Virus record (IMG/VR): IMGVR_UViG_3300042889_001503
Coordinates: 208,438 to 272,437 of that record
Length of the DNA stretch: 64,000 nucleotides
Direction: 5' to 3' (one strand)
This document shows, piece after piece, positions 6,405 to 61,894 of the stretch (positions are counted from its first letter, which is position 1; every line of letters starts with the position of its first letter). The notes beneath the pieces were generated by a model, which was given only the letters and a program-made list of their open reading frames with translations, was not told the DNA's origin and ran no database searches. A program made the position numbers and the translations under genes.

Positions 6405-6527
6405 ATTTAACGAGAGTAAAAAGTTAAAATAATTACCTTCGTTTTATTTTGGGGAGTAAAAAATTGATAAAATTACCCTCGTAATATAAACGAGAGTAAT
6501 TTTTACCTTCTTGTTATATTTATAGAT

Positions 6528-6896
6528 ATGGATGTTAAAATTAGTGAGGGGAAGTTAGAGTTTTTAATGGATACTATCTTTGATGGTTTGGGTGTAGATG
6601 TCAATCGTCTATCACACAATTTCCAAGTAAGAATGAGTTATTTAGAATTTTTAGCTTCTGTAACAACAAGACGAGAAATGGTTGCTAAATATGATTTTGA
6701 GTGGAATTACATAATTGTGTTTGATGATAAGTTTTATGATTTGGTTAAACCTTGGGTTTCTCGGAAAGTTTATGATGTAATTAAAGAAGATTTAATTAAG
6801 AGAATTTTTAAGGTGTATACCAAGAAATATAAATCAATATATAAAGAGGAGCCTAAATCAATTAAATTTGTTGATAAGGATTTTAATAAAGTTTAA
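6528..6896 (+). CDS. Hypothetical protein, leader-like start
   Basis: MDVKISEGKL; TATTTATA at 6517-6524. Confidence 0.7.
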   Translation: MDVKISEGKLEFLMDTIFDGLGVDVNRLSHNFQVRMSYLEFLASVTTRREMVAKYDFEWNYIIVFDDKFYDLVKPWVSRKVYDVIKEDLIKRIFKVYTKKYKSIYKEEPKSIKFVDKDFNKV

Positions 6897-14120: not shown

Positions 14121-14133
14121 TATATTTATAGTT

Positions 14134-14904
14134 ATGAACTTACACGAAGATATACAAAGAATAAGACAAATGATGATTTCTGAGGAGATGGTCCAATCAG
14201 ATGCGTGGAAATCAATCAAAAAAACATTAGACATTCTTAAAAAGAAAAAGAAAGTTTTAATCTTAAGTTGTTCCAATAGATATAATTGGGATGAAAAAAA
14301 CCTTGACATACCAAAATCAAAGATGATTGCAATGTATCTTAACGATGAGTTAAAAGACTCAGTGTTAATTGATGTTTCCGAACTTAACATTGTTCCTTGT
14401 GAGGGGAATGTATCAAGAAAAGACGGGAACAGTTGTGGATTACTTAAATCTATGCTCAAAGATAAGAAAAAGAATCCATCCGGAGACCATAGATGTTGGG
14501 CAAGTTATAACAATCCAAAGGATGAGTTATGGAAGATATCCAAAGAGTTATTTGAGTCAGATGCTGTTGTATTCTTTAGTTCAATTAGATGGGGACAAAC
14601 CAATATGTTCTATCAGAATTTAATTGAGCGATTGACTTGGATTGAGAACAGACACGCAACATTGGGGGAATCAAATCTTGTTAAAGATATTGAGACAGGA
14701 TTCATTTGTGTTGGACAGAATTGGAATGGTGAGAACGTAACTGAAACACAGAAAGAAGTTCATAAGTTTTATGGATTCAAACCAAACAATGACTTGTATT
14801 GGAATTGGCAATATACCAAAGATGTGAATGATGAAACTCAAAAATCATATAAGGATTCACACAAGAAGTTTATTAAAGATACAAAATTACCTGAAGATAA
14901 ATAA
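14134..14904 (+). CDS. Flavodoxin-fold NAD(P)H-dependent FMN reductase-like protein, leader-bearing
   Basis: MNLHEDIQRIRQMMISEE leader; ILSCSNR, IVPCEGNVS, SDAVVFFSSIRWG, LIERL; TATTTATA at 14123-14130. Confidence 0.7.
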   Translation: MNLHEDIQRIRQMMISEEMVQSDAWKSIKKTLDILKKKKKVLILSCSNRYNWDEKNLDIPKSKMIAMYLNDELKDSVLIDVSELNIVPCEGNVSRKDGNSCGLLKSMLKDKKKNPSGDHRCWASYNNPKDELWKISKELFESDAVVFFSSIRWGQTNMFYQNLIERLTWIENRHATLGESNLVKDIETGFICVGQNWNGENVTETQKEVHKFYGFKPNNDLYWNWQYTKDVNDETQKSYKDSHKKFIKDTKLPEDK

Positions 14905-26662: not shown

Positions 26663-26963
26663 GAGACAGAATAATTTATTGATGGAGGATTTACCCATTA
26701 GTCTTCGTAGACGAATTAATTATAATATTCTTAAAGACCATTTGGATTTTTCCATATTAGAATCCGTTAATCCTTGTGATTATAGTACATTAGGGGATTT
26801 TATTGGTGAGATGTGTGATATGATGGTTGTGGATTTTTTAGATGATTTTGAATATGATAGCGGTCTAAAAGTTAGTCCAAAAGATAAAGATGATTTTTAT
26901 TATTTTATGACTGATAATTTTGCTGATTACCTTCAAGAATTTTATGATAAACAATGTGCGTAA
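26643..26963 (+). CDS. Leader-bearing acidic hypothetical protein
   Basis: MKIIITERQNNLLMED. Confidence 0.75.
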   Translation: MKIIITERQNNLLMEDLPISLRRRINYNILKDHLDFSILESVNPCDYSTLGDFIGEMCDMMVVDFLDDFEYDSGLKVSPKDKDDFYYFMTDNFADYLQEFYDKQCA

Positions 26964-26991
26964 CCGATATATTTATATTAAAACAAATTAT

Positions 26992-37085: not shown

Positions 37086-37107
37086 ATTTACACAGATATT
37101 TATAGTT

Positions 37108-38226
37108 ATGAAAATTAAGATTACCGAAACTCAATATAAAAATTTAGACGAAGCCGTTGGTGTCCCAACCAATATTATTTCCGTCTCCCAACAACTATAC
37201 GATAAGATGATGTTGGAACTTAGACCCAACGCCAATTTAAACGCTCAATTCCAAAAAACAATTACCTTAAAAGGTGATTTTCAAATTAACGAATATAAGT
37301 TTGACACAATAAAATTATCTTTTAATGTTCACGATTTGGATGATTATGAATTTGACGGTATAGAAAAACCTAAAGTGTTGTTAAATGGTATGACACACCA
37401 CGGGAAGGTTAAGATGAATGCTAAGTTTAATTATGAGGCAAACCAAAATATGAACAAAATTGAATTGTCAATTACTTTTGTTGTTGATAATGATGCGACA
37501 AGTCAAGACGTTATTGATGAGTTTAAGAAAGAACGAACATTAATGATTTCAAGTTTGGCTCACGAACTAAAACACGCTTATGATGAATCTGTTAACCCAA
37601 TAGTTCAAACACATAAAAGAGTTGATTATAATATTGGGACTCAAAGAAGATTTGGGAATATCCCACCGTTAAATAAATTATTAAATTATATGTATTTTGC
37701 TCACACCACAGAAAATTTGGTTAGAGCAACTGAAGTATATGCCGCGTTGGAAGAGAGTGGAATCACAAAGGAAGATTTTCTTAAATTTATCACAAACCAT
37801 AAAGTTTACGTTGCCTATAAAGATGGGATTAATTTAACTTACGAGGGATTAAAAGAAGATTTAAAGAATATTATTCCTCAAATTAAACAAACTTTTGACG
37901 ATAGTGGTATTAGTTATCCGGAGGACGCATCTGATGATGAGATGGTTGAAGTGACATTAGAGGTATTCTTTAAAACATTATTACAATGGAAAGCTGGTGG
38001 TATGAGAGATTTTTTAACCGATGATTTTATGGAAGAACTATTTGGATTCAGAGGTGCTAAACAAAGATATTTTGATAAGTATCTTAGTAAGATTACTCGA
38101 TTTGGTAACGACTACGAGAAATTCTTCAAATATGAGATTAATCAAACAAGAAACATTTGTCTTAAGATGACAAAAAAATTAAGTAAATTATATTCCTTAA
38201 TAAAAGACAAAAACCCCCAACAATAG
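37108..38226 (+). CDS. Leader-bearing protein with HExxH zinc-protease motif
   Basis: MKIKITETQYKNLDEA; LAHELKHAYD; TATTTATA at 37097-37104. Confidence 0.6.
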   Translation: MKIKITETQYKNLDEAVGVPTNIISVSQQLYDKMMLELRPNANLNAQFQKTITLKGDFQINEYKFDTIKLSFNVHDLDDYEFDGIEKPKVLLNGMTHHGKVKMNAKFNYEANQNMNKIELSITFVVDNDATSQDVIDEFKKERTLMISSLAHELKHAYDESVNPIVQTHKRVDYNIGTQRRFGNIPPLNKLLNYMYFAHTTENLVRATEVYAALEESGITKEDFLKFITNHKVYVAYKDGINLTYEGLKEDLKNIIPQIKQTFDDSGISYPEDASDDEMVEVTLEVFFKTLLQWKAGGMRDFLTDDFMEELFGFRGAKQRYFDKYLSKITRFGNDYEKFFKYEINQTRNICLKMTKKLSKLYSLIKDKNPQQ

Positions 38227-48216: not shown

Positions 48217-48248
48217 TATAAATACTAACATATTTTAATATATTTATA
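48217..48248. promoter_or_regulatory. Back-to-back TATTTATA motifs (putative late promoters)
   Basis: TATAAATA at 48217-48224 and TATTTATA at 48241-48248, 3 nt before ATG 48252. Confidence 0.55.
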
Positions 48249-48251
48249 AAT

Positions 48252-48641
48252 ATGAAAATAACGATTAAACATATTGATTCGGATGTCCCAAAAGAGAATT
48301 ATGAATTTTATAATGATTTTATCCAATATCTACAAAAATCTTATCCGTTAAAAAATAATATAATAATTAAGTTTGTTGGAAAAAGAGTTGGAGGTATGAC
48401 TACCGGACAAAGAAATACTCAAAATGAGTTAATAATATTATCTAAAGGTAGAATGAATAGGGACATTTTAAGAACACTTGCTCACGAATGGGTTCACGAA
48501 TATCAAAGAACCATTTTAAATCGAGACCAAGGTCCTGATATAGGTGGAAAGAATGAAGATGAAGCAAATTCTGAGTCAGGTTCGATAATTAAGAAATTTG
48601 AACAATCTCACCCTAAGGATGAGAAAAAAATGTATGAGTAA
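48252..48641 (+). CDS. HExxH metallopeptidase-like protein
   Basis: RTLAHEWVHEYQ...EDEAN. Confidence 0.6.
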   Translation: MKITIKHIDSDVPKENYEFYNDFIQYLQKSYPLKNNIIIKFVGKRVGGMTTGQRNTQNELIILSKGRMNRDILRTLAHEWVHEYQRTILNRDQGPDIGGKNEDEANSESGSIIKKFEQSHPKDEKKMYE

Positions 48642-53480: not shown

Positions 53481-54308
53481 ATGAAACAAACAAAAACTTA
53501 CCACGAATTGGTACAAAAAATGAGAACGTTCTTTGTAAACAAGAACTTTATTGAGGTTCCATCTCAATCACGATTATCTATTTTAGCTGCTTGCGAAAAT
53601 CCACATTCAGTTAAAACATTTGAATATGGAGGTGAAATTTGGCCGTTACCACAGACAGGACAAATGTGGTTGGAATATGAATTATTGAAAAATCCTGAAT
53701 GGGACGGTGTATTCTGTATATCAACATCATACAGAGAAGAGAAAAATCCAATCCCGGGTCGTCACGAATTAATCTTCCCAATGTTTGAATTTGAATCAAA
53801 AGGAACGATGGAAGATTTGGTTGCATTAGAACTTGAATTGTTACAATTCTTAGGATTTGATTCACCGGTTGAGGTAAACTATGAAGATGTGTGTAAAGAA
53901 TACGGTGGTGTATCCATTTTAGAGGACGAACACGAATCAAGAATGTGGAAAGAAAAAAGTGAGGTTATTTCATTACAAAACTTCCCAATTAGAACAAACC
54001 CATTTTGGAATATGAAACATAATTCAGATAACATCTTCAATAAGGTTGACGTAATCCTTTTTGGGCAAGAAACAATTGGTTCAGCTGAGAGAAGTTGTGA
54101 TGTTGTTAAGATGAGAGAGATGTTCTATACCATAGAAAATGGTGGTTACTCTCAGAAACTATTTGAATTATTTGGGAAAGATAGAGTTGAGAAAGAATTG
54201 GAAGAATTCTTATCTTTGGACTTCTTCCCACGTTTTGGTGCGGGGATTGGTCTAACAAGATTGGCGAGAGCTTACAATATAAATAAAGAATTAGTTGAGA
54301 CATATTAA
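53481..54308 (+). CDS. Class II aaRS catalytic-domain-only protein (AsnRS paralogue, asparagine synthetase AS-AR type)
   Basis: LPQTGQMWLE, STSYREE...RH...FPMFEFE (motif 2), ETIGSAERS, GAGIGLTRL (motif 3); no anticodon-binding domain. Confidence 0.8.
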   Translation: MKQTKTYHELVQKMRTFFVNKNFIEVPSQSRLSILAACENPHSVKTFEYGGEIWPLPQTGQMWLEYELLKNPEWDGVFCISTSYREEKNPIPGRHELIFPMFEFESKGTMEDLVALELELLQFLGFDSPVEVNYEDVCKEYGGVSILEDEHESRMWKEKSEVISLQNFPIRTNPFWNMKHNSDNIFNKVDVILFGQETIGSAERSCDVVKMREMFYTIENGGYSQKLFELFGKDRVEKELEEFLSLDFFPRFGAGIGLTRLARAYNINKELVETY

Positions 54309-55120: not shown

Positions 55121-55201
55121 CACAAAAAAAAATAAAAGAAATAGTTAATACAATTATTTGTTGATATTTATTAGTAACCAAATCTATAAAACACAACAAT
55201 T

Positions 55202-56323
55202 ATGAAAAACCTATCAAAAGAAGAATTATTAAGCCGTCTTGAGGCAATTAACAGAAGTAATGCTATTATTTATTTCGATTTATCGGGAATTATATTAGGT
55301 GTTAATGACATTTTTTTGGTGGCAATGGGGTATGGAATCGGTAATCACGATGAACTTATTGGTAAACACCATAGTACTTTTGTATGTGAAGAATATGCAA
55401 AGTCACCTGAATATGAAAAATTTTGGGACATATTAAGAAGTGGTAAGTACTACCAGGGAGAATTTGAAAGGAGAAGAAAAGATAGAAGTCTTATAAATCT
55501 TCAAGCGACTTATAATCCTATTTTTGATGATAGTGGTAAGATTACTAAAATAATGAAAATCGCTACTGACATTACGTCAATTGTTGATAGCAAGAAACAA
55601 ATAGACGCAATTAACCGAAGTACTGCTCTTATTAATTTTAATACAGATGGATTTATATTAGATGTAAATTCTATATTTTTAGAAACTATGGGGTATAAAC
55701 CCAACGAAAAAAATAATTTAATAGGGAAACATCACAGTGTTTTTGTAAGTTACGAGTATTCAAAGTCCGATGAGTATATTAAGTTTTGGGAAAATCTAAG
55801 AAAGGGTAAGTTTTTTGATGGAATATTTGAAAGAAGAAAAGTAGATGGTTCTATTGTTTATTTACAGGCATCTTATAATCCTGTGGTTGACAGTAAAGGA
55901 AATATTACTGAAGTAGTTAAAATTGCGACAGATATTACTGAGTCAGTAAATAATAAGAAAAAAATAAATGAACTTACGACTAATTTGACAATTGAGTTGG
56001 AAAACTCTCAAAAACTTAAACACTCAATTGAATTAGAAAAAAATGCCGCTCTGAATGATTTAGATGTAGTATTGAAAAAGAGTCAAAATGAGTTAATAAA
56101 AATAATTGTTAAATGTGCATTGGCTGTTATAGTTGGTGTTGGTATTGTGACAACTATGTTATATTGGGTGGCTATTGTGACAAATCAAGATACACAAATT
56201 ATTGGTTCAACTTGGTCAAATATGTTTAGTGTATTATTAACTAACGCATTTTCAATCGTTGGTACAATTATGGGAATTAAATACGCCACGCAGGATGGTA
56301 GTAATAAACCCTCAAGTAATTAA
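55202..56323 (+). CDS. Tandem PAS/PAC sensor fused to coiled coil and two C-terminal TM helices, no output domain
   Basis: Two AINRS...IGKHHS.FV...FW..LR.GK...F.RR.......LQA.YNP..D..G.I....KIATDIT repeats; TATTTAT at 55165-55171. Confidence 0.85.
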   Translation: MKNLSKEELLSRLEAINRSNAIIYFDLSGIILGVNDIFLVAMGYGIGNHDELIGKHHSTFVCEEYAKSPEYEKFWDILRSGKYYQGEFERRRKDRSLINLQATYNPIFDDSGKITKIMKIATDITSIVDSKKQIDAINRSTALINFNTDGFILDVNSIFLETMGYKPNEKNNLIGKHHSVFVSYEYSKSDEYIKFWENLRKGKFFDGIFERRKVDGSIVYLQASYNPVVDSKGNITEVVKIATDITESVNNKKKINELTTNLTIELENSQKLKHSIELEKNAALNDLDVVLKKSQNELIKIIVKCALAVIVGVGIVTTMLYWVAIVTNQDTQIIGSTWSNMFSVLLTNAFSIVGTIMGIKYATQDGSNKPSSN

Positions 56324-56349
56324 AATTTACCACAAATAACTAAAATTGA

Positions 56350-56398
56350 ATTGTCTTTGATATTTATATTAATAAACTAATTAAATATCAAAGACAAT
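56350..56398 (+). promoter_or_regulatory. Perfect 17-bp hairpin covering the endolysin initiation region, with TATTTATA in its 5' arm
   Basis: ATTGTCTTTGATATTTA (56350-56366) / TAAATATCAAAGACAAT (56382-56398); ATG at 56399. Confidence 0.8.
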
Positions 56399-57223
56399 AT
56401 GTTATTAAAAGTAGGGTCGAAAGGTGACGACGTAAAAAAACTACAAACAAAATTAGGGACAACCTCTGATGGTAATTTTGGTCCCGGTACCGAGAAATTG
56501 GTTAAAGAATGGCAAACCAAAAACGGATTAACTGCTGACGGAATAGTTGGTGAAGGAACTTGGAAAAAAATGTTTCCGGGTGAGATAATCAAAGAAGATG
56601 TTGTGATTCCAACAGGTGGTCCATTTAAATTAGAAAAATTAAAAGGACATATCCCTGAATCAGTAATTGCTCAGATTCCGGACACAGCAAAAAAATTCAA
56701 CATTACTAATCCATTAAGATTAGCTCACTTCTTAGCTCAATGTGGTCACGAATCAGGTGGATTCAAATCAGTGTCGGAAAACTTAAATTATTCAGCAAAA
56801 GGTTTAAAAGACACATTTAAAAAATATTTTATAAGTGAAGCTGCGGCAACACCTTACGCAAAAAACCCTGAAAAAATCGCATCAAAAGTATATGGTGGAA
56901 GAATGGGTAATGGTGATGAATCTACAAAGGAAGGTTATAAATTCAGAGGTAGAGGATATATCCAATTAACTGGTAAAGACAACTATAAAAATTTCACTAA
57001 ATTCATCGGAGAAGATTGTATTGGAAATCCTGATTTAGTTGCAACAAAATATCCGTTAGCGTCTGCGGCATTCTTCTTTGACTCAAATAAATTATGGTCT
57101 ATTTGTGATAAAGGCTCGGATGATGCTACGGTAACGTCGGTTACTAAAAGAGTAAATGGTGGAACCATTGGTTTACCTGACAGAATTAAACACTTTAAAG
57201 AATATTATAACTTATTAAAATAA
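56399..57223 (+). CDS. Endolysin: peptidoglycan-binding domain plus GH19 catalytic domain
   Basis: LKVGSKGDDV..LQ..L...DG.FG..T; RLAHFLAQCGHESG; RGRGYIQLTG; VTKRVNGG..GL.DR. Confidence 0.92.
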   Translation: MLLKVGSKGDDVKKLQTKLGTTSDGNFGPGTEKLVKEWQTKNGLTADGIVGEGTWKKMFPGEIIKEDVVIPTGGPFKLEKLKGHIPESVIAQIPDTAKKFNITNPLRLAHFLAQCGHESGGFKSVSENLNYSAKGLKDTFKKYFISEAAATPYAKNPEKIASKVYGGRMGNGDESTKEGYKFRGRGYIQLTGKDNYKNFTKFIGEDCIGNPDLVATKYPLASAAFFFDSNKLWSICDKGSDDATVTSVTKRVNGGTIGLPDRIKHFKEYYNLLK

Positions 57224-57266
57224 TTTTATATATTTACGGTATATTTATAATAAAAAACAATTAAAA

Positions 57267-58145
57267 ATGAATAAGAAATTAATTAAAGAAGACATTGCAA
57301 ATATGAAATACCTTTTTGGTTATAAACCGGGAAGAGTTATTTCTGAACAAGATATTGATTACACTACTGACGATTATTTAGATACTAACGACACTGAATT
57401 AGAAGAAAGTAACCCATTCAAAATTGGTGGGGGATTTGAAGATTACAATTTCCCTGATAAATTAAAAGATAGATTAAGTGACATTTATGATTTATTAGAT
57501 GAAGTAATGGAAGACCCGGATAACGACCCATCTGATTATTCAGATATGTATGATTTTGCGGGTGTAATAATTAGTCAAGTCTTAAATAAATTACGTGATG
57601 AATTTGGTGAGGATTTTGAAGAATACGAAGATGATGTTGATGATTATCTTAGAAATAATGAAGATGAAACAATATTTGATTTTTATAATAGTCGTTCAGG
57701 TTTTGACGATGAAGATGATGAAGATGAATTTGATGAGGATATGAATGAACAATATGACAACCAAAATGGTATGAATTGGGTTCAAAATACTACAATGGAT
57801 AGACAAAGTCCAATAGATGATGACAATGATGTTGAAGGGGGTGTGATATCAATCCTTAAAAAACATCGTTTACTTGATAACGTAGTAGAACCGGATGATG
57901 CAAGAATATTACTTAGAAATCAATCATCTGAAGTTGTTCAAAAGATTTTATCACTTTTACCTTCATTTACTGAATTAGGGTTTTTAGCGTTTATAAATTG
58001 TGAATCAGCAGATTTTTCTGATGTGGACATTTGTAGTTTACCTAACTTAGCTTTTATAAACTTAAATGGTACTGAAAATAATTTTGAAGAACAAGATTAT
58101 GAATGTGCTAACACAGAAGATTCACCTTTTTATTTCCTTGAATAG
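57267..58145 (+). CDS. Very acidic leader-bearing protein
   Basis: MNKKLIKEDIANMK...ISEQ; D/E-rich tracts; LRR-like C-terminal fragment; TATTTATA at 57242-57249. Confidence 0.75.
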   Translation: MNKKLIKEDIANMKYLFGYKPGRVISEQDIDYTTDDYLDTNDTELEESNPFKIGGGFEDYNFPDKLKDRLSDIYDLLDEVMEDPDNDPSDYSDMYDFAGVIISQVLNKLRDEFGEDFEEYEDDVDDYLRNNEDETIFDFYNSRSGFDDEDDEDEFDEDMNEQYDNQNGMNWVQNTTMDRQSPIDDDNDVEGGVISILKKHRLLDNVVEPDDARILLRNQSSEVVQKILSLLPSFTELGFLAFINCESADFSDVDICSLPNLAFINLNGTENNFEEQDYECANTEDSPFYFLE

Positions 58146-58158
58146 ATATTAAAAAAAT

Positions 58159-58184
58159 AAAACCCCCAATTTAGGGGGTTTTTT
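58159..58184. terminator. Terminator between convergent genes
   Basis: AAAACCCCC/GGGGGTTTT. Confidence 0.75.
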
Positions 58185-58186
58185 AT

Positions 58187-58879
58187 TTAAGATAAGTCTT
58201 TGGACATATTGATTGCAGCTTGTAAAGCCATTCCCATATCCTCAATTACTAATTTACCACGTTTCTTATATGGTATAACATAAGATATACCGGATTCTCT
58301 CATCCATTTTTTATCTAACTTGTCAGATTTACCATATAATTCAAGATACTTATATTCCCAACCAGCCCATTCCCACTCTTCGTAGTCTTCTTCTTTTGGT
58401 TTATAGTCGGCATCAAATAATCTATCCCCAATTTTAAATGTTTGACCTCCTCTGTGTGTATATCCGTGGTAACCAATTAGTTTATTATTATCGTCATATA
58501 CTTCAGCAACTCCGTGAGGATATTCCTCACAAACTTTCATTTTGTTTTGGTAATACCACCAACCACGTTCAATATCACCAACATATTCATCATCTTTGGT
58601 TAAAAATGAATTTGGTAAATGTTGTTCTCTTTTTAATTCTGGGGTATCTCCAAAATAATGAGAACCAATTTTTCCTCCGGTATATTTTTGTATAAAATAA
58701 ATACATTCCGGATTTATTAACCACCCATTTAAATCTCGGTGTGGAGTAATTCGGGACACTAGTTTTGTGAAACCTAAATTAATGTGAATTTTGTTTAATT
58801 TAGATTTTCCGGTATATTCAGGGTATTTTTCAAACTTTAATTTGATTTTCCCAATGTAGGGAGTTGTATTTTTTATCAT
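58187..58879 (-). CDS. Hypothetical protein
   Basis: Probable start MIKNTT; track start 58954. Confidence 0.7.
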   Translation of the reverse strand: MIKNTTPYIGKIKLKFEKYPEYTGKSKLNKIHINLGFTKLVSRITPHRDLNGWLINPECIYFIQKYTGGKIGSHYFGDTPELKREQHLPNSFLTKDDEYVGDIERGWWYYQNKMKVCEEYPHGVAEVYDDNNKLIGYHGYTHRGGQTFKIGDRLFDADYKPKEEDYEEWEWAGWEYKYLELYGKSDKLDKKWMRESGISYVIPYKKRGKLVIEDMGMALQAAINMSKDLS

Positions 58880-60025: not shown

Positions 60026-61894
60026 ATGGGAAAAATTATTGGAATTGACTTAGGAACAACTAACTCGTGTGTCTCTGTAATGGAGGGTAACGAACCGGTT
60101 GTAATAGCAAATTCAGAAGGTAAAAGAACAACACCTTCAATCATCGGTTTCATCAACGAAGGAGAAAGAAAAGTTGGTGACCCGGCAAAAAGACAGGCGG
60201 TAACCAACCCGACTAAAACAATATCATCAATTAAACGATTTATGGGTTCTACCTATGACGAGAGTAAAAACGAAATTGGGAAAGTTCCTTACTCTGTTGT
60301 AAACGAAGGTTCTCAACCAAGAGTTCAGATTGACGATAGAAAATACTCACCACAAGAATTGTCGGCAATCATCTTACAAAAGATGAAACAAACTGCCGAA
60401 GATTATTTAGGTGAATCAGTAACTGATGCGGTAATCACCGTCCCAGCTTACTTTAACGATGCCCAACGTCAGGCTACAAAAGAGGCGGGTGAAATTGCCG
60501 GATTAAATGTTCGTCGTATTATCAACGAACCAACCGCGGCGGCTCTTGCGTATGGACTTGACAAAAAAGGTGATAGTAAAATTGTTGTGTTTGACTGTGG
60601 AGGGGGAACTCACGACGTGTCTATTCTTGACTTAGGTGGTGGTGTATTTGAGGTATTATCTACCGATGGAGACACACATTTAGGAGGGGACGACTTTGAC
60701 AGAGTCATTATTGATTTCTTGGTTGAAGAATTTAAGAACGATAATGGTGGTTTAGACATCTCAAAAGATGCTATGGCATTACAAAGGTTAAGAGAAGGTG
60801 CTGAGAAAGCGAAGGTTGAATTATCTTCATCACCTCAGACAGAAATCAACTTACCTTATTTAAGTGCTGATGCTACCGGACCAAAACACTTGGTAAAAAC
60901 ATTAACAAGAGCGAAGTTTGAACAACTTGCGGCTGAGTTAATCAAAAGAACCATTGACCCTTGTAAAACGGCATTGAAAAACGCGAAACTTAAGGTTTCC
61001 GATATTGATGAGATTATCCTTGTTGGTGGAACAACAAGAATCCCGGCAATACAAGATGCGGTTAAGAAGTTCTTTGGTAAAGAACCATCAAAAGGTGTTA
61101 ATCCGGATGAGGTAGTTGCGTTAGGTGCGGCTATTCAAGGAGGTGTATTGGCTGGTGATGTGAAAGACGTGTTGTTATTAGACGTAACACCACTTTCATT
61201 AGGTATTGAAACAATGGGTGGTATTTTAACACGACTTATTGAGGCAAATACCACAATCCCAACCAAAAAGTCACAAGTGTTCTCAACAGCTGTTGATAAT
61301 CAACCTTCTGTAGAGATTCACGTCTTACAAGGAGAGAGACCAATGGCAAAAGACAACAGAACGATGGGTAGATTCCATTTAGATGGTTTACCACCATCAA
61401 TGAGAGGTGTTCCTCAAATTGAGGTAATCTTTGATATTGACGCGAATGGTATCATCAATGTATCTGCAGTTGACAAATCAACAAACAAAACACAATCAAT
61501 TAGAATTGAGGGTTCAACGGGATTATCTCAAGAGGATATTGAAAGAATGAAGGCTGAAGCTGAAGAAAATGCTGAAGCGGACAAAAAACTTAAAGAGGAT
61601 GTGGACACATTAAACTCCGCTGACAACCTGATATTCCAAACAGGTAAATCTTTAACGGATTTAGAGGATAAGATTTCTGAAGAACAAAAAACAGAAATAA
61701 CAACTCTTCTTGATACCTTGAAAGAATCTCATTCTAATAAAGATGTGGAAAATGTTAAAACGATTATGGAAGAACTTACCCAAAAGTTTCAAACCATCAC
61801 ACAGGAATTATACAATAGTGTAAATGAGAGTGAGACTCCGGAATCAGATATTAACGCTTCTGACGTAGAGTTTGAAGAAGTTAAACCTGAGTAA
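60026..61894 (+). CDS. dnaK: Hsp70 chaperone DnaK
   Basis: [57 protein letters not shown]. Confidence 0.98.

What the first reader, a model, noticed from the sequence alone, without database searches (positions are those of the whole stretch)
56350..56401. Endolysin translation-blocking hairpin with the late motif embedded in its 5' arm
Seen: a perfect 17-bp inverted repeat (56350-56366 / 56382-56398, 15-nt loop) whose 3' arm ends at the base before the endolysin ATG; TATTTATA (56361-56368) overlaps the end of the 5' arm. Known: T4 lysozyme gene e is silenced on long read-through mRNAs by a hairpin that sequesters the initiation region, while a late promoter within the structure yields a short transcript unable to fold it. 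Inference: the same logic here, blocking premature endolysin from PAS-gene read-through. This independently supports TATTTATA as a promoter.
Basis: partly seen in the sequence, partly recalled or inferred. Interest (0 to 1): 0.68.

Follow-up and report, generated by a model that had tools for sequence, protein, structure and literature searches.

The report
Promoter-embedded hairpin masking an endolysin start
A perfect 17-bp hairpin sits directly against the start codon of a jumbo phage's cell-wall-lysing enzyme and carries a phage promoter-like box in its upstream arm. Long read-through RNAs should therefore be untranslatable while the gene's own short RNA is open: the logic known from phage T4 lysozyme, here in an unrelated phage of Bacteroidota-type hosts.

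Summary
Arms 56350-56366 and 56382-56398 pair perfectly, the loop is 15 nt, and the endolysin ATG is at 56399. This is the longest perfect hairpin in the 272-kb phage genome.

It gives the endolysin the most occluded start of 330 genes: 19 kcal/mol to open, against a median of 3.8. An RNA starting in the loop is unstructured (2.7 kcal/mol).

TATTTAT is a real, positioned intergenic signal. It sits upstream of tail sheath, portal and many other genes, is conserved upstream of the endolysin in most relatives, and the phage encodes its own sigma factor. The predicted start of transcription, about 56372-56374, lies in the loop.

Six natural haplotypes keep the stem, with two compensatory pair changes. 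Other clades carry differently sequenced hairpins that also pair the promoter region with the endolysin start. Other TATTTAT-preceded genes of this genome do not show this.

The T4 gene e-like reading is therefore the best explanation (about 0.55), but three things weaken it:
- No transcription start site has been mapped.
- "Late" timing is unproven, and the upstream PAS gene has the same box.
- In the nearest hairpin-bearing relatives the upstream gene is not the PAS gene and is even divergent.

Many relatives have no hairpin. I class this as a new, non-homologous member of a known regulatory kind.

The parts
56350..56366 (+). 5' arm of the hairpin. It contains an extended -10-like TG (56358-56359) and the first six bases of TATTTATA.
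   Evidence: The TTTGATATTTAT context recurs upstream of other genes in the genome.
56361..56368 (+). TATTTATA promoter-like box, a phage-specific -10 or -7 type element.
   Evidence: TATTTAT lies 12-40 nt from the ATG in 46 distinct upstream sequences of endolysin relatives. The phage encodes a sigma factor.
56367..56381 (+). 15-nt loop. It holds the conserved ATAAAC (56372-56377) and the predicted transcription start, about 56372-56374.
   Evidence: ATAAAC is conserved 3-7 nt downstream of TATTTAT in several otherwise divergent clades. The start-site position is inferred from the Bacteroidota -7 box geometry of -12 to -5 (PMC9723704). It has not been mapped.
56382..56398 (+). 3' arm, covering positions -17 to -1 of the endolysin translation initiation region.
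56335..56340 (+). 5' half of an outer 6-bp helix. It pairs with 56401-56406 and exists only in long read-through RNA.
   Evidence: Minimum-free-energy structure.
56401..56406 (+). 3' half of the outer helix, covering the G of AUG and codons 2-3.
   Evidence: Minimum-free-energy structure.
56399..57223 (+). Endolysin gene (PG_binding_1 plus GH19-like domain, 274 aa).
55202..56323 (+). Upstream gene: two PAS domains, a coiled coil and two C-terminal TM helices. It is the source of possible read-through, and no terminator separates it from the hairpin.
55165..55171 (+). TATTTAT box of the PAS gene, in the same TTGaTATTTAT context, 30 nt before its ATG.
57242..57249 (+). TATTTATA box of the next gene (57267-58145), a typical short-leader form with no hairpin. 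It serves as an internal comparison.
   Evidence: opening cost 0.8 kcal/mol.
58159..58182 (.). First canonical, bidirectional intrinsic terminator downstream. It marks the end of the PAS-endolysin-next-gene unit.

Best explanation
The hairpin is an RNA-level insulator of endolysin translation, built around the gene's own promoter.

1. RNA that enters from upstream contains both arms. This could be RNA from the PAS-TM gene, since no terminator lies between it and the hairpin.
2. That RNA folds a 17-bp stem, about 21 bp with the inner loop pairs, plus an outer 6-bp helix. The fold buries positions -17 to -1 and flanks the AUG.
3. Bacteroidia ribosomes do not use Shine-Dalgarno pairing and depend on an unstructured, A-rich initiation region, so this RNA should be essentially untranslatable for endolysin.
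4. Host RNA polymerase, probably directed by the phage's own sigma-70-family factor, recognises TGaTATTTATA in the 5' arm and starts in the loop, at about 56372-56374.
5. That RNA lacks the 5' arm, has a roughly 27-nt unstructured A-rich leader, and is translated.

Shown here: the structure, its energetics, the motif statistics, the covariation, and the recurrence in relatives.

Inferred: the start-site position, promoter activity and timing, the existence of read-through RNA, and the translational effect.
For: - **Geometry and significance:**
- **Occlusion of the start:** the endolysin start is the most occluded of 330 genes, 19.0 kcal/mol against a median of 3.8.
- **The occlusion depends on the 5' arm:** opening cost is 19.7 kcal/mol with it and 2.7 for an RNA cut at the predicted start, z = 9.4 against shuffled upstream sequence. 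The short RNA folds no better than shuffles (-4.7 kcal/mol, z = -0.04).
- **TATTTAT is a positioned intergenic signal:** 115 of 242 copies are intergenic, top among composition-matched 7-mers, with spacing peaks at 4, 14-18 and about 31 nt from ATGs. It precedes tail sheath and portal genes.
- **Phage sigma factor present, no phage RNA polymerase beta subunit found:**
- **Covariation:** six haplotypes keep the stem. Pair 12/58 is U-A, A-U, G.U or A.A. Pair 17/53 is U-A or C-G. 98% of cells are paired. The covariation score is 0.094 against 0.041 in shuffles, reached by 7 of 500.
- **The hairpin travels with the endolysin:** it persists where the upstream gene differs.
- **Recurrence in other clades:** differently sequenced hairpins pair the promoter region with the endolysin start, some including the AUG. 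All open to 2.7 kcal/mol or less when cut at the predicted start.
- **Chimera test:** native upstream-plus-start combinations cost 6.9 kcal/mol against 4.4 for chimeric ones across 46 haplotypes (none of 20,000 permutations reached the native mean). The 48 other TATTTAT genes of this genome give 3.7 against 3.5, p = 0.18.
- **No terminator between the PAS gene and the endolysin:**
- **Precedent and host biology:** T4 genes e, soc, 49 and I-TevI (PMC3014915). Bacteroidia lack Shine-Dalgarno use and tune initiation by structure (PMC6847099, PMC3155529).
Against: - No transcription start site or expression timing is available. The metatranscriptome data are short assembled contigs, mostly from relatives. 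The listed pieces include one near-identical contig that begins at 56389 and none that bridges the hairpin, which is only weakly consistent.
- The PAS gene has the same promoter-like box, so read-through may not be early.
- In L009 the upstream gene is divergent, so the source of long RNAs there is unknown.
- About half of the relatives have no occluding structure. L051/53/54/58 place the endolysin 11 nt after an upstream gene with neither motif nor hairpin.
- The covariation rests on 2 pairs and 6 haplotypes. The inner stem and loop are partly fixed by my search patterns.
- AT-rich, partly palindromic promoter sequence (TATTTATAAATA) makes some pairing easy.
- A strand test for RNA-level selection is weak: the + strand is more stable in 13 of 18 strong haplotypes, by a mean of 0.7 kcal/mol.
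Confidence: 0.55

Rival explanations
1. The feature acts at the DNA level. The inverted repeat would be an operator for a dimeric regulator, or a cruciform-prone site, that overlaps and controls the endolysin promoter. The RNA hairpin would be incidental.
For: - The repeat straddles the promoter-like box.
- Relatives of the L008/L009 type carry further direct and inverted copies of the roughly 11-bp arm unit just upstream, which resembles iterated binding sites.
- The short-leader promoter consensus TATTTATAAATA is itself palindromic.
- Symmetric half-site changes would also look like covariation.
Against: - The arm word occurs nowhere else in intergenic DNA of the 272-kb genome.
- Other clades achieve the same occlusion with unrelated arm sequences, which a sequence-specific protein site would not allow.
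- G.U pairs occur on the + strand in several designs.
- 17-bp half-sites with a 15-bp spacer are atypical for operators.
Confidence: 0.12
2. The hairpin is an RNA processing or stability element. It would be an RNase III-type cleavage site or a protective hairpin that separates the PAS and endolysin cistrons and sets mRNA half-lives, rather than a simple translational block.
For: In long RNA there is a near-perfect duplex of 17-21 bp between two co-transcribed genes. Phage intercistronic hairpins are classic RNase III substrates (general knowledge, not tested here).
Against: - The stem abuts the ATG exactly and, in relatives, includes it. Processing does not require this.
- In L009 there is no co-oriented upstream cistron.
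- The enrichment is specific to endolysin starts.
Confidence: 0.1
3. The hairpin is an intrinsic terminator or attenuator that stops transcription coming from the PAS gene before it enters the endolysin.
For: The hairpin lies 27 nt after the PAS stop codon and is followed by AUGUUAUU, which has 5 U in 8. L003/L004 have a GC-stem hairpin followed by a T-run (read from the sequence as a terminator; my script did not flag it) at the equivalent place.
Against: - Only 3 G-C pairs in 17, and no T-run.
- The terminator scan did not flag it, while canonical GC-stem/T-run terminators abound in this genome.
- The tail after the stem is fixed by coding (MLLK).
- Other hairpin designs have no U-rich tail.
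- In L009 it occurs with a divergent upstream gene.
Confidence: 0.08
4. The palindrome is non-adaptive. It would have been generated by template switching or duplication at a recombination-prone module junction, as with the mobile promoter/stem-loop cassettes of T4-type phages, and would have no regulatory role.
For: The upstream context of the endolysin is highly mosaic among relatives, and the break point lies at the promoter region. Tandem and inverted arm copies in L008/L009 suggest slippage. Quasi-palindrome correction can mimic compensatory change.
Against: - Mismatch and wobble intermediates together with compensated states across six haplotypes suggest selection for pairing.
- Independent designs recur at endolysin but not at 48 other TATTTAT genes.
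- The stem is in exact register with the ATG.
Confidence: 0.1

Closest known systems
Phage T4 gene e (lysozyme) leader hairpin with internal late promoters (McPheeters et al. 1986, PMC311593; reviewed in PMC3014915); also T4 soc, 49 and I-TevI
   Same: A stable stem sequesters the translation initiation region of a lysis enzyme on long upstream-initiated RNA. A phage-specific promoter lies in the DNA that encodes the 5' strand, so the gene's own transcript lacks that strand and is translated. Related phages keep similar leaders.
   Different: - There is no sequence or protein homology: GH19 plus PG_binding_1 here, against T4 lysozyme.
- The phage is an unrelated jumbo phage with Bacteroidota-type signals.
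- There is no Shine-Dalgarno sequence to hide. The stem covers -17 to -1, and the AUG as well in relatives.
- The promoter box is TATTTATA, the reverse complement of T4's TATAAATA, and is probably read by a sigma-70-family phage factor.
- Timing of the upstream transcripts is unknown.
- The start site and the translational effect are not measured.
Aeh1 mobE hairpin that sequesters the ribosome binding site (Gibb and Edgell 2009, PMC2655525, cited in PMC3014915)
   Same: An RNA hairpin blocks translation of a phage gene on read-through transcripts.
   Different: It controls a homing endonuclease rather than a lysis gene. It is a T4-type phage in a host that uses Shine-Dalgarno sequences.
Canonical intrinsic terminator followed by a promoter, as upstream of many genes in this genome and of the endolysin in relatives L003/L004
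   Same: It insulates a gene from upstream transcription, and the promoter box follows directly.
   Different: Those have GC-rich short stems with a T-run and lie upstream of the promoter. Here the stem is AT-rich, 17 bp, has no T-run, and encloses the promoter and the leader.

Membership tests
T4 gene e-type promoter-embedded translation-silencing hairpin | A stable RNA helix occludes the translation initiation region on long transcripts. | tested here: met
   In silico only. The stem is 17 bp and covers -17 to -1. Opening cost is 19-19.7 kcal/mol, rank 1 of 330 genes.
T4 gene e-type promoter-embedded translation-silencing hairpin | A phage promoter lies in the DNA that encodes the 5' strand or the loop. 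| tested here: met
   Met at the motif level. TGaTATTTATA lies at 56358-56368. The motif is validated as a positioned intergenic signal and is conserved in relatives.
T4 gene e-type promoter-embedded translation-silencing hairpin | The gene's own transcript starts downstream of the 5' arm. | not testable with these tools
   Only assembled metatranscriptome contigs were available. Among the listed pieces, one near-identical contig begins at 56389 and none spans the arms. The start at about 56372-56374 is predicted from geometry.
T4 gene e-type promoter-embedded translation-silencing hairpin | Upstream-initiated transcripts read into the gene, and do so earlier than the internal promoter fires. 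| tested here: inconclusive
   No terminator lies between the PAS gene and the endolysin. However, the PAS gene has the same box, and the upstream gene in L009 is divergent.
T4 gene e-type promoter-embedded translation-silencing hairpin | Long RNA is poorly translated and short RNA is well translated. | not testable with these tools
   This needs reporter fusions, toeprinting or ribosome profiling.
Rho-independent terminator | A GC-rich stem with a short loop, followed directly by a U-tract. | tested here: not met
   3 G-C pairs of 17, a 15-nt loop, and a tail of AUGUUAUU. It was not flagged. Genuine terminators of this genome are listed.
Any curated RNA family (Rfam 15) | A covariance-model match. 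| tested here: not met
   There is no match at 56300-56450 at E <= 1.
Bacteroidota sigma-A type promoter (-7 box TAnnTTTG at -12 to -5) | An 8-mer TAnnTTTG, with TTTG near -33. | tested here: not met
   TATTTATA shares the TA and the central T, but not the TTG. True TATCTTTG boxes occur upstream of other window genes. The motif is therefore better read as the target of the phage sigma factor, which is an inference.

The most novel reading that the evidence does not exclude
Hairpins that occlude the start and have the promoter built into them may be a recurrent, convergently evolved solution for endolysin control across a large clade of freshwater jumbo phages with Shine-Dalgarno-independent hosts. 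About eight different stem designs are seen. They may act together with a phage sigma factor and a phage-encoded PAS sensor / two-component module fused or adjacent to a holin-like membrane protein. That would amount to a sensor-gated lysis cassette in which the endolysin is translated only from its own promoter.
Probability: 0.3. Interest if true: 0.68.

Novelty: new member of a known kind. Interest (0 to 1): 0.5.

Why it matters
If confirmed, the T4 lysozyme trick (hide the start on read-through RNA, place the promoter inside the stem) would not be a T4 peculiarity. It would be a general way for phages to decouple endolysin synthesis from upstream transcription, found here in an uncultivated 272-kb phage whose hosts do not use Shine-Dalgarno sequences.

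It would give a clean natural test of how much secondary structure alone controls initiation in Bacteroidia. It would also anchor a phage-specific promoter (TATTTAT) and its sigma factor, and provide an annotation rule for lysis genes in metagenomic phages. The neighbouring PAS-TM gene, and the histidine kinase plus receiver genes in relatives, point to sensory control of lysis, which would be the more surprising result.

Tried and rejected
- **Terminator reading.** Rejected as the main role.
- **Known RNA family.** None found.
- **Genome-wide operator.** The arm word is unique in intergenic DNA.
- **A general property of TATTTAT genes.** Rejected. The 48 other such genes show no native-versus-chimeric excess. 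Only minor cases exist, at G000 125346, 75470 and 72774.
- **RNA evidence.** The look-up of sequencing runs gave six metatranscriptome runs with small shares. Read laying was run once on 3,401 bases, within the 6,000-letter limit. It returned only short assembled contigs, mostly of relatives, so no start site, strand or read-through evidence could be drawn.
- **Metagenome pattern scan for more haplotypes.** Most of the 48 hits were unrelated coding sequence. One new haplotype, L149, came from the viral scan.
- **Strand asymmetry test for RNA- versus DNA-level selection.** Weak: 13 against 5.
- **Hairpin strength against upstream gene orientation.** Only a trend: 9 of 15 co-oriented against 4 of 15 divergent (my count from the table). 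No statistical test was run and relatedness was not corrected for.
- **RNA thermometer.** Considered and set aside, because the stem is perfect and about -20 kcal/mol.
- **Family searches on the TM module.** PHROG and Pfam searches of the PAS protein's membrane module and of the downstream gene found nothing.
- **Not used.** The large protein searches, structure prediction and complex prediction were not needed. No alternative genetic code was used.

Full report
**Setting**

The window is the last 64 kb of a single-contig, 272,437-bp virus record, G000:C1:208438-272437. GC content is 32%, and CheckV estimates 91% completeness.

The endolysin core has its only nucleotide matches in Flavobacterium and Cellulophaga phages and in two huge uncultured phages. 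Upstream regions show Bacteroidota-type -7 boxes (TATCTTTG) and no Shine-Dalgarno motifs. The host is therefore most likely a member of the Bacteroidota/Flavobacteriia. This is an inference.

**Observation**

- Searches confirm a perfect 17-bp inverted repeat, 56350-56366 with 56382-56398, and a 15-nt loop.
- The 3' arm ends at 56398 and the ATG of a 274-aa ORF is at 56399.
- TATTTATA is at 56361-56368.
- The ORF is an endolysin with PG_binding_1 and a GH19-like domain.
- Its start codon and N-terminus are conserved in 80 IMG/VR relatives at 77-100% amino-acid identity, so the start assignment is secure.

**Is it more than chance?**

- The RNA fold of 56320-56440 is -25.8 kcal/mol with z = -5.25.
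- The stem is the longest perfect hairpin in the whole genome. The runners-up, at 15 and 13 bp, are GC-stem/T-run terminators.
- Twenty Markov shuffles of the genome gave longest stems of 11-15 bp, and none reached 17.

**Effect on the start region**

For every one of 330 ORFs I computed the free energy needed to make -18 to +6 single-stranded within a -60 to +20 context.

- The endolysin ranks first, at 19.0 kcal/mol. The median is 3.8 and the 95th percentile is 10.3.
- If the RNA is cut at the start predicted from the motif, the cost falls to 2.7 kcal/mol.
- An RNA starting at 56372 folds no better than shuffles: -4.7 kcal/mol, z = -0.04.
- In long RNA an outer 6-bp helix, 56335-56340 with 56401-56406, also covers the G of AUG and codon 2.
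- The PAS gene's stop codon (56321-56323) lies 27 nt before the stem. By my estimate of ribosome reach, a terminating ribosome would not melt the main helix. This is an inference.

**Is TATTTAT(A) a promoter?**

The window count alone is weak. The genome-wide picture is much stronger.

- 115 of 242 TATTTAT copies lie in the 7% of the genome that is intergenic. This is the highest share among all composition-matched 7-mers, which range from 13% to 29%.
- Copies upstream of genes fall into sharp spacing classes:
  - 4-6 nt before the ATG: 28 genes, with an A immediately before the motif in 82% (often gaTATTTAT). These are possibly leaderless RNAs.
  - 12-20 nt: 34 genes, consensus TATTTATAAATAAAA, including many very large ORFs.
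  - About 30 nt: the endolysin, the PAS gene and the tail sheath gene (portal at 29).
- The box often follows a canonical terminator directly.
- It precedes the tail sheath, portal and an adaptor-like gene.
- The phage encodes a sigma-70-family factor with regions 1.2, 2 and 4 (PHROG 351) at G000:C1:163675-164475, and no RNA polymerase beta subunit was found.
- In relatives, TATTTAT lies 12-40 nt upstream of the endolysin ATG in 46 distinct upstream sequences, although the surrounding sequence and even the upstream gene differ.

I conclude that TATTTAT is a phage-specific promoter element, preceded here by an extended -10-like TG at 56358-59. "Late" is plausible but not shown.

With Bacteroidota geometry (box at -12 to -5; PMC9723704) or ordinary sigma-70 geometry, position +1 falls at about 56372-56374. 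That lies in the loop, at a hexamer ATAAAC (56372-56377). This hexamer is conserved 3-7 nt downstream of the box in several divergent clades.

**Covariation in the same hairpin**

The protein-based search and the pattern searches gave six haplotypes of this hairpin (alignment A1).

| Pair (alignment columns) | States seen |
|---|---|
| 12/58 | U-A (window, L149), A-U (L009, L008), G.U (L088), A.A (L086) |
| 17/53 | U-A (window), C-G (all others) |
| 16/54 | C-G in all, except C.A in L008 |

- Overall 98% of cells are paired, and two pairs change on both sides.
- The covariation score is 0.094 against 0.041 in shuffles, reached by 7 of 500. Slid registers give 31-47% pairing.
- In L009 the stem extends into the AUG.
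- Caveats: there are few independent events. The inner stem and the ATAAACTAAT part of the loop were fixed by my search patterns for some sequences.

**The hairpin belongs to the endolysin, not to the PAS gene**

- The PAS gene is adjacent only in the window's near-identical copies (L001/L002) and in L003/L004.
- L003/L004 have a GC-stem hairpin with a T-run, which I read as a terminator, followed by the promoter box, and no occluding stem.
- In L009 the upstream gene is on the other strand, with a 170-nt spacer. In L008/L014 no PAS gene is detected upstream.
- In L051/53/54/58 a 225-aa coiled-coil/TM protein ends 11 nt before the endolysin, with neither box nor hairpin.

**Recurrent designs**

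Folding the upstream regions of all distinct relatives showed other, unrelated stems that pair the promoter region with the endolysin start:

- A 14-bp stem whose 5' arm contains the box and whose 3' arm contains the AUG (the L060, L063, L069, L070, L010-L016 group).
- Palindromes centred on the box with an outer helix reaching the AUG (L052, L042, L039). Their inner pairs covary: TAAT/ATTA, CAAT/ATTG, TGAT/ATCG.
- Further designs in L035, L012, L026/L080, L027 and L062.

All of these open to 2.7 kcal/mol or less when cut at the predicted start.

I then ran a chimera test that keeps natural sequence statistics.

| Set | Native upstream plus start region | Chimeric | Permutation result | Sequences where at most 1 chimera reaches the native value |
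|---|---|---|---|---|
| 46 endolysin haplotypes | 6.9 kcal/mol | 4.4 kcal/mol | 0 of 20,000 reach the native mean | 17 of 46 |
| 48 other TATTTAT genes of this genome | 3.7 kcal/mol | 3.5 kcal/mol | p = 0.18 | 2 of 48 |

Haplotypes are phylogenetically related, so the permutation result overstates independence. I count about eight independent designs. Roughly half of the relatives have an unusually open leader instead, so the feature is recurrent but not universal.

**Rivals**

- **Terminator.** The stem is not flagged and is unlike the genome's terminators. Other designs lack any U-rich tail.
- **Operator or cruciform.** The arm word is unique in the genome's intergenic DNA, and different clades use different arm sequences. 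On the other side, extra arm copies upstream in L008/L009 and the palindromic promoter consensus keep this possibility alive.
- **RNase III or stability element.** Not testable here.
- **Non-adaptive palindrome at a mosaic junction.** Argued against by the compensated states and by the specificity for endolysin.
- **Strand asymmetry.** It favours + strand RNA only weakly.
- **Known RNA family.** No Rfam family matches.

**RNA data**

Six metatranscriptome runs hold small parts of the stretch. One read-laying run on 3,401 bases returned assembled contigs only. Among the listed pieces, one near-identical contig (97%) starts at 56389 and runs into the gene, and none bridges 56350-56398. This is compatible with a start inside the hairpin but proves nothing.

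**Comparison with the known**

The logic matches T4 gene e, and also soc, 49 and I-TevI. There, the start region is sequestered on early RNA, late promoters lie in the DNA that encodes the 5' strand, and lysozyme synthesis is reduced about 100-fold (PMC3014915; McPheeters 1986, PMC311593).

The differences are:
- The phage and the enzyme are unrelated to T4 and its lysozyme.
- The host does not use Shine-Dalgarno sequences, and structure tunes initiation there (PMC6847099; PMC3155529).
- The promoter box is different.
- Timing is unknown.

Membership in that functional class is met for the two sequence-testable features and untested for the start site, the read-through and the translational effect.

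**Verdict**

Novelty: a new, non-homologous member of a known regulatory kind. Interest is moderate (0.5), raised by the convergent recurrence and the sensory lysis-gene neighbourhood.

Noticed in passing
window 55202-56323 (+); L051 265-2989: The gene upstream of the endolysin encodes two PAS domains, a coiled coil and two C-terminal TM helices. In relatives L051/53/54/58 the coiled-coil/TM module is a separate 225-aa gene that ends 11 nt before the endolysin. There it is preceded by a PAS histidine kinase (532 aa) and a receiver-only response regulator. This looks like a sensor-linked, holin-like lysis module. The TM module has no Pfam or PHROG match.
   Followed up: partly
G000:C1:163675-164475 (outside the window; L150 1330-2130): The phage encodes a sigma-70-family factor with regions 1.2, 2 and 4 (PHROG 351). 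No RNA polymerase beta subunit was found. It is the likely reader of the TATTTAT boxes.
   Followed up: partly
whole genome; for example window 6517-6530, 14123-14136, 37097-37110, 48241-48254: 28 genes have TATTTAT only 4-6 nt before the ATG, with an A immediately before the motif in 82% (often gaTATTTAT). With -7 or -10 geometry, transcription would start at or next to the AUG, which suggests a large class of leaderless phage mRNAs in a phylum where leaderless mRNAs are rare, about 5%.
   Followed up: partly
whole genome; for example G000 2371-2400, 26935-26980, 168520-168565: The short-leader promoter consensus TATTTATAAATAAAA contains a perfect 12-bp palindrome (TATTTATAAATA). It also contains TATAAATA, the T4 late-promoter box, and the reverse complement of TATTTATA is TATAAATA (checked by eye).
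   Followed up: no
window, many sites; for example upstream of 21533, 23166, 28013, 28538, 33647(-), 51068, 52378, 61978: Host-type Bacteroidota -7 boxes (TATCTTTG, some with TTTG near -33) precede many small genes of the window. These are probably early genes read by host sigma-A.
   Followed up: no
G000:C1:125297-125345 and 75425-75465 (outside the window): Two weaker cases of the same architecture. One is an 11-bp inverted repeat whose 3' arm abuts the ATG of an 1884-aa gene, with TATTTAT in the loop. The other is an 11-bp repeat that ends 4 nt before the ATG of a 415-aa gene.
   Followed up: partly
L008, L009, L014, L081-L089, L149, about 60 nt upstream of the endolysin ATG: Relatives carry extra copies of the roughly 11-bp arm unit just upstream of the hairpin, one inverted and one direct. 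These form an additional small palindrome and may be slippage products or binding-site iterations.
   Followed up: partly
window 58187-58879 (-): A 230-aa protein matches Pfam Tad6, a type I Thoeris inhibitor (E = 6e-13). It is a candidate anti-defence gene next to the lysis region.
   Followed up: no
window 60026-61894 (+) and 53481-54308 (+): The phage encodes a full-length Hsp70/DnaK homologue (847 bits) and a class II aminoacyl-tRNA-synthetase-like protein (tRNA-synt_2).
   Followed up: no
window 57267-58145, about 57640-57740: The gene downstream of the endolysin has an acidic GAT/GAA-rich repeat. Its length is variable among metatranscriptome contigs, with joints skipping 42-96 nt. The protein has no family match.
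   Followed up: no
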